From positions 162,481 through 226,480 of IMG/VR virus record IMGVR_UViG_3300046323_000587: a stretch of 64,000 nt of DNA; one strand, 5' to 3'. Every line of letters starts with the position of its first letter. The first letter of the stretch is position 1. Shown in pieces: positions 44,821 to 51,349 of this stretch. A program made the translations under genes and the position numbers. The notes beneath the pieces were generated by a model. That model ran no database searches and was not told where the DNA came from. It saw only the letters and a program-made list of their open reading frames with translations.

Positions 44821-45627
44821 TTACAACTTACATATAATATCAAGTTCTCTAACTATTTTATAATTCTTTGCATCAATATCAATTTCAGCACCAGCAAAGT
44901 ATCCAATATAAACAATATCTCCTAGATTATATTGCATTGGAATTAAAGTACCTGATTCAATTCCATACATACCTTGACCAATAGAAACAATTTGGCCTTT
45001 TTCGTATTTAACTTCATCTTGAATCAATCGTTCTCCTAAACGACCTGTTTTAATATGAGAATTTTGATAAATTACTCCTGATGTAGTTGTAGTGTAATCA
45101 ACACGATCTTCAATGATTCTTATTGCTACTTTATCATGACGACAAATTGGTAGTTTAGCATATTCTTGATATGATTTAGTAATGTAATTCCAACAACTAA
45201 AACTTTTACATATAAGTTCATTTATTGGGATATAAATTGTTTTTGTATTAGCATTGATTTTATAGACAATTTTAATATTTTCTGTTGTATCTTCATATAT
45301 AATAACTACAAAAGAATTTACACAAGAATATATATTACCAATAAAAGGAATAGTTGATTTAGGAAATAAATCTTTTTGCCAATCTAATAACTCTTCAAAA
45401 GACACTTGTTTTTTATTCTCAATCAACTCTTCATAAGTCAAAAATTCTACTTCTAATTTATCATCAAATCTATTTTTAACAATATCTTTTGAATCATTTA
45501 TTACAACATTATTAAATACATCATTAAGAGGTGCACGACTTTCAAATTTTACAATATCAGGATTATTTGCTAATTTAATATTTGCTAAAGAAGAATTTAA
45601 TATTTGCTTATTTTCTTTCATATTCAT
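44821..45627 (-). CDS. groES: GroES (Cpn10) co-chaperonin domain fused to ~160-aa N-terminal extension
   Basis: HDKVAIR...TTSGVI...KGQIVSIGQG....GTLIPM....GDIV....FAGAEIDIDAKNYKIVRELDII. Confidence 0.8.
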   Translation of the reverse strand: MNMKENKQILNSSLANIKLANNPDIVKFESRAPLNDVFNNVVINDSKDIVKNRFDDKLEVEFLTYEELIENKKQVSFEELLDWQKDLFPKSTIPFIGNIYSCVNSFVVIIYEDTTENIKIVYKINANTKTIYIPINELICKSFSCWNYITKSYQEYAKLPICRHDKVAIRIIEDRVDYTTTTSGVIYQNSHIKTGRLGERLIQDEVKYEKGQIVSIGQGMYGIESGTLIPMQYNLGDIVYIGYFAGAEIDIDAKNYKIVRELDIICKL

Positions 45628-46416: not shown

Positions 46417-46429
46417 TTTTGATTTTTTA

Positions 46430-47500
46430 TAAATTTTATTTTAATTATTGATTACAAATATTTCAAATATTGTTTCAATTTTTTTAATAAAATTTTTTAA
46501 AAGTTTCGAAAAATTTAAGATCTTTAAAAAATTGTTAAAATTCTTTTTATTCTTGAACAGTTTAATTAGTCTAGTTAGTCTAGTGAATTAGTAGAGTATT
46601 ACTATAATACTAGACTGTACTTACAATAGAACTATATAGAACTAGACAAAATACTAAAAGACTAGATAAAGAGAAATTTAATTAATATTGATATTAGAAT
46701 AATACCCCTGGCAGTGAATTTAATAGGAAATTTATACCCCCACTATTGAAGAATTTTATAGGAAATCAAAAAGCTATTAAAAGAGAATTACTTAAAAAAG
46801 AATTAGTTATAAGTTTAAACTATATAATCAATTTAAAATCAATTTAAAATCAATTTAAATTATTTGAGAAGTATCAATAATTGAATTATTAAAGAAAAAC
46901 TATATAAATAATAATATAGTATTTAGTTATTAAGATTTATTTTTATTATTTTTATTATTTTTATTGAATTTTATTGATGATAAATTTAATGTTGAAACTT
47001 AAAAGTTAAACTTTACATTGAAATATTAAATGAATTTTAAAATAAATTAAAAAACAATTAGTAAATAACAAGTAATAATTGAGAGGTTTTAATTTAGATA
47101 GTTGATTAAGAGATTAAAGGGACAGTTTTGATTATTAAAGTTAATTATTAAAGTTAGTTATTAAAGCTAGTTGATGGATTTAATTTAGTTAATTTAAAAA
47201 TTTAGAAACTTTAAAGAGGACTTTTATTGAGAAATTTTATTGAGAACTTTTAAGAATTAATTTTGAAGAACTTTTAGACTAATTTTAGATTAGTTTTAGA
47301 TTAGTTTTTAGACTAATTTTAGGACTTACTTTTACGATTTACTTTAGAAGATTTGAGAAGATTTTAGAAATCTAGTTTAAACTGTAATAAATGGAATATG
47401 CTTTTAAATTTAAAATTTTATTGAATTAGTTTGATAGGATGTGGATTGATTTGTAAAAGGTATAGTGTAAAGTACCCCTACCGTAGTTGGGCGCGGGAAA
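46430..47500. repeat. Low-complexity divergent spacer with short tandem repeats (candidate genome-end/packaging/control region)
   Basis: AATTTAAAATC x2-3, TTATTAAAG x3, TTTTAGA(C/T)TA x4-5, TACCCC x3; separates minus-strand late from plus-strand early genes. Confidence 0.6.
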
Positions 47501-47554
47501 GGACAGAGGTATCAACGTAGATATTCTGTTATTCTTTCTTGCCAACTTTCAAAA

Positions 47555-48910
47555 ATGCCACAAGAAACAAGAGTTCCATCAGTATTCGCAACAGCAAATG
47601 TATCATTTACTTCTGCATTAACAGAAGAACAATTGCAAACAGAATTTTCAGGTATGGCGGTTACTCGTTCAAAACCAACAGCATCTTCTGATGATGTTCA
47701 AGCGGGTCTTTTCAATTTAATGATGAAATTTGCAAACTTAACTTATGCTACTTCACAAGGCGTAGGTGCGTTAGCTATGAATTTCAATCATAGAGGTACG
47801 ACAGACACAGGTTTAGTTGCAAGAGATACGGCGACTTTGAAATGGTTTAAAGATCAAGGTCTTTACATTGGTGCGGAAGACGCAACCAAAACTACTTTCA
47901 AAGGCAAAAAATTTGTTGCAGTTTTGTCCAAATTGGCAGGTGATGACCGAAAAATCAAAACTATTACGGAAGACGAATTTAGCCCTAAAAGCAATATTCT
48001 TTGCCCGATAGGTAGTTTTGCTACACCTGAGGCAGTCATAGCCCATTTTTCGGATATTATGACTTCAAATGTCAAAAAATTGCAATTAGCAAAACTAGTG
48101 AAAGATACATTGGAAATTGTTGAACCTAATCCTAAAACTCACGTAAAAGTGACGATAGAGAAAATTTTAAGCAACGACCCAACAAAACCAACGACAGACG
48201 AAGCCAAAGAACTTGTCAAATTTATTGGCAAACAATTTGCAGGACTAGCTTTTCCTTTGGGAACAATTGATGGCGTTACTTTAACTGCACCTATTGGTCA
48301 GCCAAAAGAAGTGCAAGTAGCTTATAACGGAAAACCAGTATACGCCCCACAAGTTGAATTGTACAAAGCAAGAGTATTTGACTTTGTTACAGGTGAATTG
48401 GTCGCAGAAGGAGTTTTAGACAGCAAAGATTTGTTTAATACAATGGCTTTACCTGTTTCATACAAATCAATCTCTTCGGAGTATTTGGAGAAAAATGAGG
48501 CTTTGTTGGCACAAGCAAAAACAAGCAATTTGCCAATTTTTGGTGTTCATAAAGCAGATTTTGAACACATCTTGCAATTTGATATCAAGAAATCTTTTGA
48601 GACAATAGGCGAAAATTTGATTATGCAAATCAATTTAGATGCTGTTTGTCTAAAAGGAAAAGGTTATGACGAAGCTAGTGCAGATCAAAAATTGACAAGA
48701 TGTTTGTTTAATTTCAGAGGAGAAGTAGTAAAATTGGATACTTTGTCAGACGCGACTAAGAAAGCTGTTGGACATTTTTCAGATCCTGAAAAACTAGAAG
48801 CAATTAAAAGCAAAATAGCTGCTGATGATCTTGCTACTTTAAAAGGGGCTCTTTTAGATAAAGAATATTTCAGAATTACGAAATTATTCCCTGCTTTGGC
48901 AATTAAATAA
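47555..48910 (+). CDS. First early-region protein, unknown function
   Basis: 451 aa, Ala/Lys-rich, higher GC than neighbours, own terminator. Confidence 0.8.
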   Translation: MPQETRVPSVFATANVSFTSALTEEQLQTEFSGMAVTRSKPTASSDDVQAGLFNLMMKFANLTYATSQGVGALAMNFNHRGTTDTGLVARDTATLKWFKDQGLYIGAEDATKTTFKGKKFVAVLSKLAGDDRKIKTITEDEFSPKSNILCPIGSFATPEAVIAHFSDIMTSNVKKLQLAKLVKDTLEIVEPNPKTHVKVTIEKILSNDPTKPTTDEAKELVKFIGKQFAGLAFPLGTIDGVTLTAPIGQPKEVQVAYNGKPVYAPQVELYKARVFDFVTGELVAEGVLDSKDLFNTMALPVSYKSISSEYLEKNEALLAQAKTSNLPIFGVHKADFEHILQFDIKKSFETIGENLIMQINLDAVCLKGKGYDEASADQKLTRCLFNFRGEVVKLDTLSDATKKAVGHFSDPEKLEAIKSKIAADDLATLKGALLDKEYFRITKLFPALAIK

Positions 48911-48916
48911 TTCTAT

Positions 48917-48951
48917 AACCCTATGATTAATTTCATAGGGGTATTTTTTTT
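48917..48951 (+). terminator. Intrinsic terminator
   Basis: CCCTATGA/TCATAGGG + T-run. Confidence 0.75.
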
Positions 48952-49129
48952 AATCAAAAATTCGCTTCCCAAAGATAGTGCTTTGATTTTTTATTATTAA
49001 ATTTTGTTTTAGCTTAGTTCTTTGATACATTTTTTCTGCGTGTACCAAATAACTTATACTTAAAATACTTGAATACTTTGATACCCAGAAACCTTATATG
49101 GTTAGCTGATATTGCATAGAATACTTGGT

Positions 49130-49174
49130 AGAGCGGTAGAAATTTTTAGGTTTACGCTCTTTAATATAAACCTA
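49130..49174 (+). ncRNA. H-type pseudoknot candidate
   Basis: S1 AGAGCG/CGCTCT, S2 TAGGTTTA/TAAACCTA, L1 11 nt, L2 0, L3 6 nt. Confidence 0.45.
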
Positions 49175-49192
49175 TCACTAATAATTATTTAT

Positions 49193-49236
49193 ATACGTAA
49201 TGAAATTGTTTAATAACGTTTCATTACGTATTTTTT
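49193..49236 (+). terminator. Intrinsic terminator
   Basis: ATACGTAATGAAA/TTTCATTACGTAT 13 bp + T-run. Confidence 0.7.
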
Positions 49237-49239
49237 CTT

Positions 49240-49336
49240 AACATAGTTCTAGCCTTTGCTATGTTATTATAATTGCCTGATGAGAGCTAGACGAAACAGT
49301 ATTAGAAGTAGTTACTCTAATAGATTATGGTCGCAA
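49240..49336 (+). ncRNA. Type I hammerhead ribozyme with minimal stem II and pseudoknot
   Basis: Stem I TTGC/GCAA, core CTGATGA (49277) and GAAAC (49293), GTC cleavage triplet (49330-32), loop II GCTAGA pairs with upstream TCTAGC (49248-53). Confidence 0.75.
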
Positions 49337-49352
49337 ACTAAATTTTATTTTT

Positions 49353-49514
49353 ATGTCAGCATTACAAACAAAAGTAATAGAAAAAGTGTTACAAACATTA
49401 ATTTCTAATGGAACTCTTACAGGAGCTAATTTGCTTTCTGTTTTAATTCAAGGAGAACTAAATCAAGAAAAATTAGAAGATATTCTAAACAGATTTATTG
49501 ATTTAGAAAAATAA
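49353..49514 (+). CDS. 53-aa hypothetical protein directly after the hammerhead
   Basis: Not in track; MSALQTKVIEKVLQTLISNG...NRFIDLEK*, followed by terminator. Confidence 0.6.
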   Translation: MSALQTKVIEKVLQTLISNGTLTGANLLSVLIQGELNQEKLEDILNRFIDLEK

Positions 49515-49556
49515 TTTTCACATCTTCAAGACAAAGCTTAATGTCTATAAATAAGT

Positions 49557-49588
49557 AGCCTAGTACATCGTGTATTAGGCTTTTTTTT
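49557..49588 (+). terminator. Intrinsic terminator
   Basis: AGCCTAGTAC/GTATTAGGCT + T8. Confidence 0.75.
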
Positions 49589-49611
49589 CAAACTTTTTAT
49601 TTATCAAATTT

Positions 49612-50100
49612 ATGAAATCTCATATCTTAGAAACAAATTTTACGTCTGTATTAGGTGTTGTAGTAGAATCTGTCCAATTTTCAATCGAAGTTAGACAATT
49701 TGTTGCGCATATAGCAAAAGCACTGTTAAGTGAATTGAATTACGGTGATTATAAAGCTCGTGAAGCTGAATTAGGACGAGTTTATGCTAAAATTCAAGAT
49801 GTGTTTTATTTTTTTAATGTAAACACACATATTAATTCAATGCAAATACGTAACGCCATTCGTGTGTTAGATATGCGTATCAATCATTGTGAAAACTCTT
49901 TGAAAATAGGAGATTGGACAAAAGCAGACTCGCATCCACAACATTTTGAAGGTATTACAGAGAAGACTAGAGATAGTTATATTCGTAAAGACTTTGGTAT
50001 ATTTGCAACTCTCTATAATGGAAAAACTATGGAAGTAATGTTAGCTACAAGACAAATCCTTGTAGATTCATTAATTACAATAACACCAGAATTTGAGTAA
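49612..50100 (+). CDS. Hypothetical early protein
   Basis: 162-aa ORF. Confidence 0.65.
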   Translation: MKSHILETNFTSVLGVVVESVQFSIEVRQFVAHIAKALLSELNYGDYKAREAELGRVYAKIQDVFYFFNVNTHINSMQIRNAIRVLDMRINHCENSLKIGDWTKADSHPQHFEGITEKTRDSYIRKDFGIFATLYNGKTMEVMLATRQILVDSLITITPEFE

Positions 50101-50159
50101 TTTTCACCAAACCTATACAGTCTTTTATTAATGGATAATGTAGGTTTAAATTTGAATCA

Positions 50160-50393
50160 ATGAAACACCTCTTAATACTTCCAGTTCTTTTATTCTTATC
50201 ATTATTAGGAATAAATAAGTTCTCTATTTCCAATCCGCCATTATGGTTAATTAGTATTTTAACTAAGAATGTTGAAGGAGTGGGAAAGAGTGTATATTCT
50301 ATTGGTTTCTCAAAAGAACTGATGGAAATGTATGAAGTAGATGAGTATCAATTAGGTAATTGGTATGTGAGAATATTCTCAGAAATTGTTTAA
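50160..50393 (+). CDS. Small protein with N-terminal hydrophobic helix
   Basis: MKHLLILPVLLFLSLLG. Confidence 0.5.
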   Translation: MKHLLILPVLLFLSLLGINKFSISNPPLWLISILTKNVEGVGKSVYSIGFSKELMEMYEVDEYQLGNWYVRIFSEIV

Positions 50394-51281: not shown

Positions 51282-51349
51282 GCTCTTATAGTTTAATGGA
51301 AAAATCTCTGATTATTCAGATGTTCTTGGTTCGATTCCAGGTGAGAGCA
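51282..51349 (+). tRNA. tRNA-like gene with truncated anticodon loop (pseudo-tRNA)
   Basis: Acceptor GCTCTTA/TGAGAGC, D-arm TAGTTTAATGG, T-arm CTTGG-TTCGATT-CCAGG; anticodon stem TCTGA/TCAGA closes only TTAT. Confidence 0.7.

What the first reader, a model, noticed from the sequence alone, without database searches (positions are those of the whole stretch)
49240..49514. Hammerhead ribozyme cutting 20 nt upstream of an unannotated small ORF
Seen: complete core (CUGAUGA, GAAAC, GUC), stem I UUGC/GCAA and a 1-bp stem II. Its loop pairs 6 bp with a sequence presented in an upstream hairpin (AACATAG/CTATGTT); stem III is imperfect near the core. Known: short-stem-II pseudoknotted type I hammerheads occur in bacteria and phages. 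Inference: cleavage after 49332 creates a defined 5'-OH leader for the 53-aa ORF.
Basis: partly seen in the sequence, partly recalled or inferred. Interest (0 to 1): 0.65.

Follow-up and report, generated by a model that had tools for sequence, protein, structure and literature searches.

The report
Divergent RAGATH-1-type hammerhead ribozyme in phage
A freshwater jumbo phage carries, between two genes, a self-cleaving hammerhead RNA motif of a type already known from phages; it is a divergent copy that the standard database model misses, and it should cut the transcript 20 bases before a small strain-specific gene.

Summary
The window is the last 64 kb of a 226-kb, 27% GC freshwater phage. 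At 49240-49336 (+) there is a complete type I hammerhead: all core bases, a 4-bp stem I, a one-pair G-C stem II with a 7-nt loop, and a 6-bp loop-loop pseudoknot to an upstream 7-bp hairpin.

This layout is that of Rfam RF03152, the RAGATH-1 hammerhead. I reached that family by scanning IMG/VR with the core pattern. Its pseudoknot and hairpin covary strongly.

The candidate scores only 13.4 bits against RF03152 (gathering score 56.3), though in exactly the proposed register. Its hairpin is longer and its stem III irregular. Rfam also misses several other clear one-pair-stem-II hammerheads.

Chance is excluded: about 1e-4 core motifs are expected per window, and about 2e-7 with all helices. A model built from 25 independent phage examples finds this site alone in the genome (36 bits).

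In other lake metagenomes the 105-nt module is identical while the downstream gene is replaced or absent. Cleavage itself is untested.

Verdict: a new, divergent member of a known kind, of modest interest.

The parts
49193..49239 (+). Long A/U-rich hairpin (49193-49231) followed by a U-rich tail (UUUUUCUU). It looks like a terminator and ends directly in front of P0.
   Evidence: MFE -16.2 kcal/mol over 55 nt. A comparable strong hairpin precedes P0 in most class members: median -15.4 vs -7.5 kcal/mol in controls, p about 8e-5, though the members are not all independent.
49240..49265 (+). P0 hairpin: a 7-bp stem (49240-46 with 49259-65) and a 12-nt loop. Loop bases 49248-49253 (UCUAGC) are the pseudoknot partner of loop II.
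   Evidence: The equivalent hairpin in RF03152 members covaries: 3 of 4 pairs carry compensatory changes.
49266..49272 (+). 7-nt A/U linker (AUUAUAA) between P0 and stem I.
   Evidence: Same length and composition as the RF03152 consensus linker AUAAAAU.
49273..49276 (+). Stem I, 5' strand (UUGC).
   Evidence: Pairs with GCAA at 49333-49336.
49277..49283 (+). Conserved core CUGAUGA (C3 to A9).
   Evidence: A variant contig in run X6 reads G at 49281, which is position N7, the only free core position.
49284..49292 (+). One-pair stem II (G49284-C49292) closing the 7-nt loop II (AGCUAGA). Bases 49286-49291 form the 6-bp pseudoknot with 49248-49253.
   Evidence: duplex -7.9 kcal/mol. The homologous pseudoknot in the class is 100% paired, with 4 of 5 pairs compensatory.
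49293..49332 (+). G12 A13 A14 (49293-49295), then stem III (49296-49331): A-U and C-G at the base, an internal loop, a 7-bp helix 49300-06 with 49316-22, and an apical loop. C17 is at 49332. The predicted cut lies between 49332 and 49333.
   Evidence: Stem III energy is -1.7 kcal/mol, at the weak end of the class range.
49333..49352 (+). Stem I 3' strand (GCAA, 49333-36) and the remainder of the 20-nt A/U-rich leader that would carry a 5'-OH after cleavage.
   Evidence: The leader has no Shine-Dalgarno motif, like nearly every other gene of this phage.
49353..49514 (+). 53-codon ORF with no detectable relatives. It is present or absent between strains.
   Evidence: It is absent in an X6 contig and replaced by another ORF in an X4 contig.
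49557..49588 (+). Intrinsic-terminator-like hairpin with a U8 tail, closing the small ORF's unit.

Best explanation
This is a genuine type I hammerhead ribozyme with the RAGATH-1 architecture. It is transcribed on the + strand together with its flanking genes.

Proposed mechanism:
- As the RNA emerges, the P0 hairpin loop pairs by 6 bp with the 7-nt loop II. This holds the one-pair stem II next to the 4-bp stem I and assembles the conserved core.
- The RNA then cuts itself after C49332.
- The upstream fragment ends in a 2',3'-cyclic phosphate.
- The downstream fragment starts with a 5'-OH at G49333. It carries a 20-nt unstructured A/U leader and the 53-codon ORF, and ends at the terminator near 49588.

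The module therefore marks and processes the 5' boundary of a small, exchangeable gene cassette.

Shown here: the motif, its statistical non-randomness, its match to a covarying known class, and its conservation as an island between strains. Inferred: transcription through it, catalytic activity, and any effect on the ORF's expression.
For: **Motif.** All core bases are present, plus G10.1-C11.1 and C15.2-G16.2.

**Match to the known family.** The architecture is identical to RF03152, part for part: hairpin, 7-nt linker, one-pair stem II, loop II of the form A-NNNN-GA. Relative to that class, the otherwise invariant pseudoknot pair G-C (P0 loop G, loop II C) is flipped to C-G here, which keeps the pairing.

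**Class structure is real.** The pseudoknot is 100% paired with 4 of 5 pairs compensatory. P0 has 3 of 4 pairs compensatory. No shuffle out of 500 reaches the observed values.

**Chance is excluded.** About 1e-4 core motifs are expected per window and about 2e-7 with all helices.

**Independent model.** Model R1, built from 25 independent IMG/VR examples, finds only this site in the window and in the 226-kb genome: 36.1 bits, E about 3e-9 to 1e-8.

**Folding cost.** Forcing the hammerhead fold costs 10.8 kcal/mol over the MFE. That is inside the range of Rfam-confirmed members (5.7-11.0) and well below chance pattern hits (16-26).

**Context matches the class.** There is a strong hairpin directly upstream and an ORF start 20 nt downstream. 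The strand is the same as the neighbouring genes.

**Population data.**
- An X4 contig has 49235-49339 identical, then an unrelated sequence with an ATG 22 nt after the cut.
- An X6 contig differs at N7 and by one deleted T at 49273.
- Another X6 contig joins the ribozyme's 3' end directly to 49528, with no ORF.
- Coding DNA of the divergent strain in the same runs differs by about 11-13%.

**Same island pattern in class members.** L103 vs L124 and L072 vs L104 share only the ribozyme module.

**Literature.** RAGATH hammerhead variants are reported as shown ribozymes (PMC11061315). A one-pair stem II with a 6-bp pseudoknot supports fast cleavage in a type II hammerhead (PMC3088659).
Against: - No Rfam hammerhead model reaches its threshold. 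RF03152 gives 12.7-13.4 bits against 56.3, and a decoy elsewhere in the genome scores 11.8.
- Stem III has only two clean pairs next to the core. No other class member examined has so irregular a base.
- P0 is 7 bp with a 12-nt loop, against 4-5 bp with a 9-nt loop in the class.
- Perreault et al. found that small changes in helix lengths around the pseudoknot cut activity by orders of magnitude in their type II construct.
- The hammerhead fold is not the predicted MFE, and the region folds no better than shuffles (z = -0.31).
- A terminator-like hairpin sits directly upstream, and no promoter was identified. Transcription through the element is therefore assumed.
- No RNA data exist for this phage.
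- More distant relatives of the downstream gene (45-56% identity) lack the ribozyme.
- R1's seeds were fetched with the candidate's own core pattern, so its high score mostly restates the rarity of that core.
Confidence: 0.62

Rival explanations
1. It is a true descendant of the RAGATH-1-type hammerhead but is crippled or very slow. The irregular stem III and the enlarged P0 would make it a decaying relic, or a form that needs a helper (a protein or high Mg2+). The region would then be kept for another reason, such as recombination between phage modules.
For: Stem III has 3 mismatches in 9 positions, or a 2x7 internal loop. The RF03152 score is very low. Helix-length changes were strongly deleterious in a related pseudoknotted hammerhead (PMC3088659). 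The X6 variant may shorten stem I to 3 bp through the deletion at 49273 (depth 2, possibly an error).
Against: Every core base is intact, and the 6-bp pseudoknot and stem I are perfect. The only core difference seen in a variant is at the free position N7. The 105-nt module is identical in a contig whose flanks are unrelated, which suggests constraint. Stem III energy (-1.7 kcal/mol) equals that of L103, L124, L129 and L135, two of which pass Rfam.
Confidence: 0.27
2. The ribozyme is active but does not serve the 53-codon ORF. It would be a generic module-boundary processor that separates upstream RNA from whatever lies downstream. After 3' trimming, the strong upstream hairpin (49193-49231) would become the protective 3' end of the upstream RNA.
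For: The same module precedes a different ORF (X4) or no ORF (X6). The ORF has no relatives. Class members share only the ribozyme island while both flanks differ. A strong hairpin right upstream is a class trait. About half of class members have no ORF start within 40 nt.
Against: ORF starts 10-40 nt after the cut are enriched (46% vs 17%, p about 5e-4). They occur here at 20 nt and in the X4 variant at 22 nt. This suggests the short leader matters. The two readings are not mutually exclusive.
Confidence: 0.35
3. It is a chance resemblance. The two hairpins would be ordinary terminator or regulatory hairpins, and the P0 region would be a promoter (TTAACA, 16-nt spacer, TATGTT with a TG) that starts transcription near 49272.
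For: A sigma-70-like match covers 49238-49265. There is no Rfam hit at threshold. The fold z-score is -0.31.
Against: Expected chance occurrence is about 2e-7 per window with all helices. Promoter-like sites are no more frequent than in shuffles (3 found vs 5.2 expected). The layout matches a covarying known family part for part. It is the only R1 hit in the genome.
Confidence: 0.02

Closest known systems
Rfam RF03152, RAGATH-1 hammerhead ribozyme (phage-associated type I hammerhead variants)
   Same: The order and kind of parts are the same: an upstream hairpin whose loop pairs with loop II, a 7-nt A/U linker, a 4-5 bp stem I, CUGAUGA, a one-pair G-C stem II with a 7-nt loop of the form A-NNNN-GA, GAAAC, stem III and GUC. 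The viral context is the same, with a strong hairpin upstream and often an ORF 12-39 nt downstream.
   Different: The score is 13.4 bits against a gathering score of 56.3. P0 is 7 bp with a 12-nt loop instead of 4-5 bp with 9 nt. The pseudoknot is 6 bp instead of 5. Stem III is irregular instead of about 9 clean pairs. There is no sequence similarity outside the core.
[quoted passage not shown] 2011, PMC3088659, their Figure 4)
   Same: A one-pair stem II is compensated by a 6-bp Watson-Crick tertiary helix linking the stem I and stem II sides. That work showed experimentally that the pseudoknot is essential for fast cleavage.
   Different: The topology differs. There, stem II is open and its 3' tail pairs with loop I. 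Here, stem I is open and the closed loop II kisses a separate upstream hairpin loop.
Rfam RF00163, Hammerhead_1 (classical type I)
   Same: Same catalytic core and the same permutation, with stem I open.
   Different: The classical model expects a multi-pair stem II and a loop/bulge tertiary contact. It gives no match at the locus at E up to 10.
Engineered ribozyme insulators of the RiboJ type (from my own knowledge, not checked here)
   Same: A hammerhead placed just upstream of a coding region trims the 5' leader to a fixed short sequence with a 5'-OH. This makes expression independent of what lies upstream.
   Different: Those are synthetic constructs based on a satellite-RNA hammerhead. 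Here the arrangement is natural and its effect is untested.

Membership tests
Hammerhead ribozyme (class as a whole) | Conserved core: C3 U4 G5 A6 N7 G8 A9, G12 A13 A14, the A15.1-U16.1 pair, and H17 at the cleavage site | tested here: met
   CUGAUGA 49277-83, GAAA 49293-96, U49331, C49332. The preferred G10.1-C11.1 and C15.2-G16.2 pairs are also present.
Hammerhead ribozyme (class as a whole) | Three helices meeting at the core (stems I, II, III) | tested here: inconclusive
   Stem I has 4 perfect pairs. Stem II has a single G-C pair, as in RF03152. Stem III has 2 pairs, then an internal loop, then 7 bp, or 6 of 9 positions paired.
Hammerhead ribozyme (class as a whole) | Tertiary contact bringing stems I and II together | tested here: met
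   A 6-bp Watson-Crick pairing of 49286-91 with 49248-53, -7.9 kcal/mol. The homologous contact covaries in the class.
Hammerhead ribozyme (class as a whole) | Site-specific self-cleavage giving 2',3'-cyclic phosphate and 5'-OH ends | not testable with these tools
   No RNA runs hold this phage. This needs a bench assay.
Rfam RF03152 RAGATH-1 hammerhead | Covariance-model score at or above the gathering score (56.3 bits) | tested here: not met
   12.7 bits genome-wide (E 3.2). 13.4 bits locally, in the proposed register.
Rfam RF03152 RAGATH-1 hammerhead | Upstream hairpin whose loop is complementary to loop II, followed by a 7-nt A/U linker | tested here: met
   P0 at 49240-65 with the 6-bp complement, and linker AUUAUAA of 7 nt. 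The helix and loop are longer than the consensus.
Rfam RF03152 RAGATH-1 hammerhead | One-pair G-C stem II closing a 7-nt loop of the form A-NNNN-GA, then GAAAC | tested here: met
   G-AGCUAGA-C-GAAAC at 49284-49297.
Rfam RF03152 RAGATH-1 hammerhead | Regular stem III of about 9 pairs adjoining the core | tested here: not met
   3 non-standard pairs among the 9 model pairs. All class members examined have at least 4-5 clean pairs at the base.
Rfam RF00163 Hammerhead_1, RF02275 HH9, RF02277 HH10 | Covariance-model match at the locus | tested here: not met
   No match at the locus at E up to 10. No other hammerhead family is listed for the 114-nt stretch.

The most novel reading that the evidence does not exclude
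The unit formed by a strong hairpin, the P0 hairpin, a one-pair-stem-II hammerhead and a leader of about 20 nt may be a portable, recombination-prone 5' boundary cassette for exchangeable small phage genes. It would act as a natural ribozyme insulator. Here it sits in a phage whose genes lack Shine-Dalgarno sites. This copy would then represent a divergent subtype (long P0, 6-bp kissing contact, interrupted stem III) that current Rfam models do not detect.
Probability: 0.25. Interest if true: 0.5.

Novelty: new member of a known kind. Interest (0 to 1): 0.3.

Why it matters
Taken alone, this adds one more hammerhead to the thousands known in phages.

- **Detection gap.** This copy and several other clear one-pair-stem-II hammerheads in IMG/VR escape every Rfam hammerhead model. 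Phage ribozyme counts based on Rfam are therefore underestimates.
- **Natural experiment on function.** The strain comparison shows the same 105-nt ribozyme module in front of a 53-codon ORF, in front of a different ORF, and in front of no ORF. Across the class there is a strong hairpin just upstream, an ORF start about 12-39 nt downstream, and sequence similarity confined to the ribozyme. This makes the long-open question of what phage hammerheads do testable as 5'-end definition at the boundaries of exchangeable gene cassettes.

Tried and rejected
**Rfam and model searches**
- Rfam at gathering on the whole window found only a tRNA-like gene.
- Rfam at E up to 10 on 700 nt found no hammerhead family.
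- RF02277, RF00163 and RF02275 on the whole genome gave nothing at the locus.

**Searches for other copies**
- No paralogous copy exists in the genome by blastn-short.
- A loose hammerhead descriptor gives 5 hits per genome, so it is uninformative alone. The same holds for a loose window pattern.
- Exact-core scans of IMG/VR found nothing. blastn against GenBank phages found nothing. The window's own record may be left out of these searches.
- A metagenome scan with the stem I 3' strand fixed returned 13 high-GC chance hits and no relatives.

**Relatives of neighbouring genes**
- IMG/VR holds no relatives of the neighbouring proteins.
- Homologues of the downstream 162-aa protein (45-56% identity) were fetched. 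Their upstream regions hold no hammerhead core, and the 55-aa ORF there is unrelated to the 53-aa ORF.
- The 53-aa ORF has no Pfam or PHROG hit and no word-search relatives. I ran no further search on it, so 'no relatives' rests on the word search only.

**Promoter search**
- Sigma-70-like sites are not above chance.
- The Bacteroidota-type -7 motif TAnnTTTG is absent on the + strand upstream and is not enriched in the window.
- No enriched intergenic k-mer emerged.

**Other**
- No RNA runs hold this phage, so there is no end mapping.
- A second MAFFT alignment (A4) was worse than A3 and was dropped.
- I looked by eye for a kink-turn reading of the stem III internal loop and rejected it. The bases do not give tandem G-A pairs.
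- The original description of RAGATH-1 could not be read.
- Downstream ORFs of class members have no known function.

Full report
**Setting.**
The window is bases 162481-226480 of a 226,480-bp IMG/VR virus record with about 95% estimated completeness. It comes from freshwater metagenomes.
- The record is 23-34% GC.
- It carries a portal, a large terminase and a major head protein on the minus strand.
- It has essentially no Shine-Dalgarno motifs before its genes.
- The finding lies in a 700-nt gene-free stretch inside a block of plus-strand genes. Upstream is a 451-aa ORF ending at 48910 with its own terminator at 48919-48940. Then come the element, a 53-codon ORF (49353-49514), a terminator (49557-49588) and a 162-aa ORF.

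**The observation.**
- P0 hairpin at 49240-49265: a 7-bp stem and a 12-nt loop.
- A 7-nt linker.
- Stem I: UUGC pairing with GCAA.
- Core CUGAUGA.
- A single G-C pair closing the loop AGCUAGA.
- GAAAC.
- An imperfect stem III.
- GUC, with the cut predicted after C49332, 20 nt before the ATG.
- Loop II bases 49286-49291 are the exact complement of P0-loop bases 49248-49253.

**Database test.**
- No Rfam family other than tRNA reaches its gathering score in the window.
- No hammerhead family appears at E up to 10 in 700 nt.
- Hammerhead_1, HH9 and HH10 give nothing at the locus.
Taken alone, this would look like a refutation.

**Finding the class.**
I scanned IMG/VR for the core with a free loop (CTGATGAG, seven free bases, CGAAAC).
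- 41 of them also had G-U-H and a stem I of at least 4 bp.
- Many had the candidate's layout: a small upstream hairpin whose loop complements loop II, an A/U linker of about 7-8 nt, a 4-5 bp stem I and a one-pair stem II.
- Run against Rfam, six of fourteen such loci hit RF03152, the 'RAGATH-1 hammerhead ribozyme', at 59.7-85.8 bits. That family's consensus structure is this layout.
- Eight others get no hammerhead hit at all, although they have perfect stems and pseudoknots (for example L103, L081, L139). Rfam is therefore not sensitive across this architecture.
- Perreault et al. showed experimentally that a one-pair stem II with a 6-bp pseudoknot supports fast cleavage in a type II hammerhead (PMC3088659).

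**Is the class structure real?**
I aligned 15 RAGATH-1-like 5' halves (12 distinct sequences).
- The pseudoknot is paired in 100% of cells, and 4 of 5 pairs show compensatory changes.
- P0 has 3 of 4 pairs with compensatory changes.
- No shuffle out of 500 and no slid register comes close.

**How the candidate fits.**
- Scored directly with RF03152, the locus is the best hit in the genome but reaches only 12.7 bits (E 3.2). A decoy elsewhere scores 11.8.
- On the 114-nt element, RF03152 is the top family of 4227.
- The loss of score comes from the hairpin, which is dropped by the local alignment because it is 7 bp with a 12-nt loop. It also comes from three non-standard pairs in stem III.
- Feature by feature, the linker length (7 nt), the loop II pattern (A-NNNN-GA), the closing G-C pair and the position of the pseudoknot in both loops agree with the family.
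- One pseudoknot pair is invariant in the 12 class sequences (P0 loop G, loop II C). Here it is flipped to C-G, which keeps the pairing.

**Chance.**
I used a first-order Markov model of the genome.
- The family-derived core is expected 1.1e-4 times per window and 4e-4 times per genome. It occurs once.
- Planting the core in 20,000 random contexts gives G-U-H, a stem I of at least 4 bp and a stable stem III in 3.7% of cases. Adding a pseudoknot of at least 6 bp gives 0.175%.
- Chance is not a tenable explanation even across many thousands of windows.

**An independent model.**
I built a covariance model (R1) from 25 IMG/VR one-pair-stem-II hammerheads, without the candidate.
- It gives one hit in the window and one in the whole genome, at 49270-49339: 36.1 bits, E about 3e-9 to 1e-8.
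- Caveat: the seeds were fetched with the candidate's own core pattern, so this largely restates the rarity of the core plus stem I.

**Energetics.**
- Forcing the hammerhead pairs costs 10.8 kcal/mol relative to the MFE. Rfam-confirmed members cost 5.7-11.0, and the obviously accidental pattern hits cost 16-26.
- Stem III (-1.7 kcal/mol) is as weak as the weakest members but not weaker.
- The pseudoknot adds about -7.9 kcal/mol.
- The plain MFE fold does not favour the ribozyme, as is also true for members of the class.

**Population evidence.**
No RNA run holds the phage. Contigs from four other freshwater runs were laid on 48400-50200. All these contigs are short and shallow, so each observation is a lead rather than a measurement.
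- In X4, a 189-nt contig matches 49235-49339 without a single difference. It then continues into unrelated sequence with an ATG 22 nt after the predicted cut.
- In the same runs, coding DNA of a divergent strain differs by about 11-13%.
- In X6, one contig covers 49247-49346 with six differences and one gap. The two differences reported away from the contig end are T to G at 49281 and loss of one T at 49273. Position 49281 is N7, the only free core position. The lost T would trim the linker or stem I.
- Another X6 contig joins the ribozyme's 3' end directly to 49528, so the 53-codon ORF is absent.
- The same island pattern is seen among class members. L103 and L124 share only about 150 nt around the ribozyme. 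L072 and L104 share only the 77 nt from P0 to stem I.

**Context across the class.**
- In 12 of 26 non-redundant examples, an ORF of at least 50 aa begins 10-40 nt after the cut, against 17% at random same-strand positions (p about 5e-4). The value here is 20 nt.
- The downstream proteins are unrelated small proteins of unknown function.
- The 55 nt before P0 are much more structured than random segments: median -15.4 vs -7.5 kcal/mol, p about 8e-5. They often form a hairpin with a U-rich tail. Here this is 49193-49239.
- Some members carry an extra hairpin inserted in the linker or in stem III. The architecture therefore tolerates changes in helix size.

**What was not found.**
- More distant relatives of the 162-aa gene (45-56% identity) do not have the ribozyme upstream.
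- The 53-aa ORF has no relatives in the word search and no family match. The source record does call it as a gene.
- No promoter could be assigned.

**Mechanism proposed.**
- Transcription from upstream, either read-through of the hairpin at 49193-49239 or a start in 48941-49190, produces P0 first.
- The P0 loop captures loop II as soon as loop II is made. Stem I closes only when its 3' strand is transcribed.
- The core then cuts after C49332.
- The products are an upstream RNA ending in a 2',3'-cyclic phosphate and a short monocistronic RNA. That RNA has a 5'-OH, a 20-nt unstructured A/U leader and the 53-codon ORF, and it ends at the terminator at 49557-49588.
- Whether the 5'-OH end stabilises or destabilises the message depends on the host's RNases and is open.
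- The steps shown are the motif and its conservation. Transcription, catalysis and the effect on expression are inferred.

**Verdict.**
The element is a divergent, previously unlisted member of a known phage hammerhead type. It fails the formal Rfam threshold but meets the architectural features, except for a regular stem III. I put about 0.9 on it being a genuine hammerhead by descent and about 0.6 on it being active as it stands. Interest is modest.

Noticed in passing
window 51282-51349 (+): A tRNA-like gene (Rfam tRNA, 50.8 bits) has an anticodon arm 3 nt too short: a 5-bp stem with a 4-nt loop UUAU. ARAGORN reports 'tRNA-???' with a two-base anticodon. It is present identically in a second sample (L020).
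   Followed up: partly
whole genome G000 (window included): Of 158 ORFs of at least 120 aa, almost none has a Shine-Dalgarno-like motif in the 30 nt before the ATG (AGGAG 0, GGAG 0, AGGA 1). Leaders are A/U-rich. This points to a host with SD-independent initiation. The host was not identified.
   Followed up: partly
L016:1-320 and L021:100-296 (upstream of homologues of the 162-aa gene): Two distant relatives share a conserved non-coding element of about 110 nt in the position where this phage has the hammerhead. It begins ACUCAAACCAAAGGAU and ends GAAGACCUACUUGUUAGG. It has no Rfam match at E up to 1. It may be an unknown structured RNA.
   Followed up: partly
L017:1093-2411 and L018:482-1927: Other relatives have a 1.3-1.4 kb gene-free stretch upstream of the same gene. 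In L018 it holds tRNA matches, one spanning 156 nt (548-703), which may carry an insertion or intron.
   Followed up: no
IMG/VR loci L103, L124, L104, L041, L027, L081, L139, L048, L040: These are clear one-pair-stem-II, pseudoknotted hammerheads with perfect stems. None reaches the gathering score of any Rfam hammerhead family. The high-GC ones place the pseudoknot partner directly 5' of a 5-7 bp stem I, with no hairpin.
   Followed up: partly
IMG/VR loci L069, L100, L115, L123, L128, L039: These RAGATH-1-type hammerheads carry an extra hairpin inserted in the P0-stem I linker, or large insertions in stem III (up to 74 nt). The core is unchanged.
   Followed up: no
L036:6173-6408; L050:1774-2137: Phage contigs carrying RAGATH-1 hammerheads also carry a permuted tmRNA (63.4 bits) and clusters of tRNA genes within a few kb.
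   Followed up: no
window 44821-45627 (-): A 268-aa protein has a C-terminal GroES/Cpn10 domain (Pfam E 2e-9; PHROG co-chaperonin GroES). The protein is much longer than a normal co-chaperonin.
   Followed up: no
window 49336-49349 and 49508-49521: Short imperfect direct repeats (AAACUAAAUUUUAU and AAAAUAAUUUUCAC) flank the 53-codon ORF. The X6 contig without the ORF reads as if it were joined near these repeats. This is consistent with gain or loss of the ORF by recombination.
   Followed up: partly
window 46417-47554: A 1.1-kb gene-free region lies between the divergent minus-strand and plus-strand gene blocks. Genome-wide there are several others of 1-2.5 kb. Their content was not examined.
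   Followed up: no
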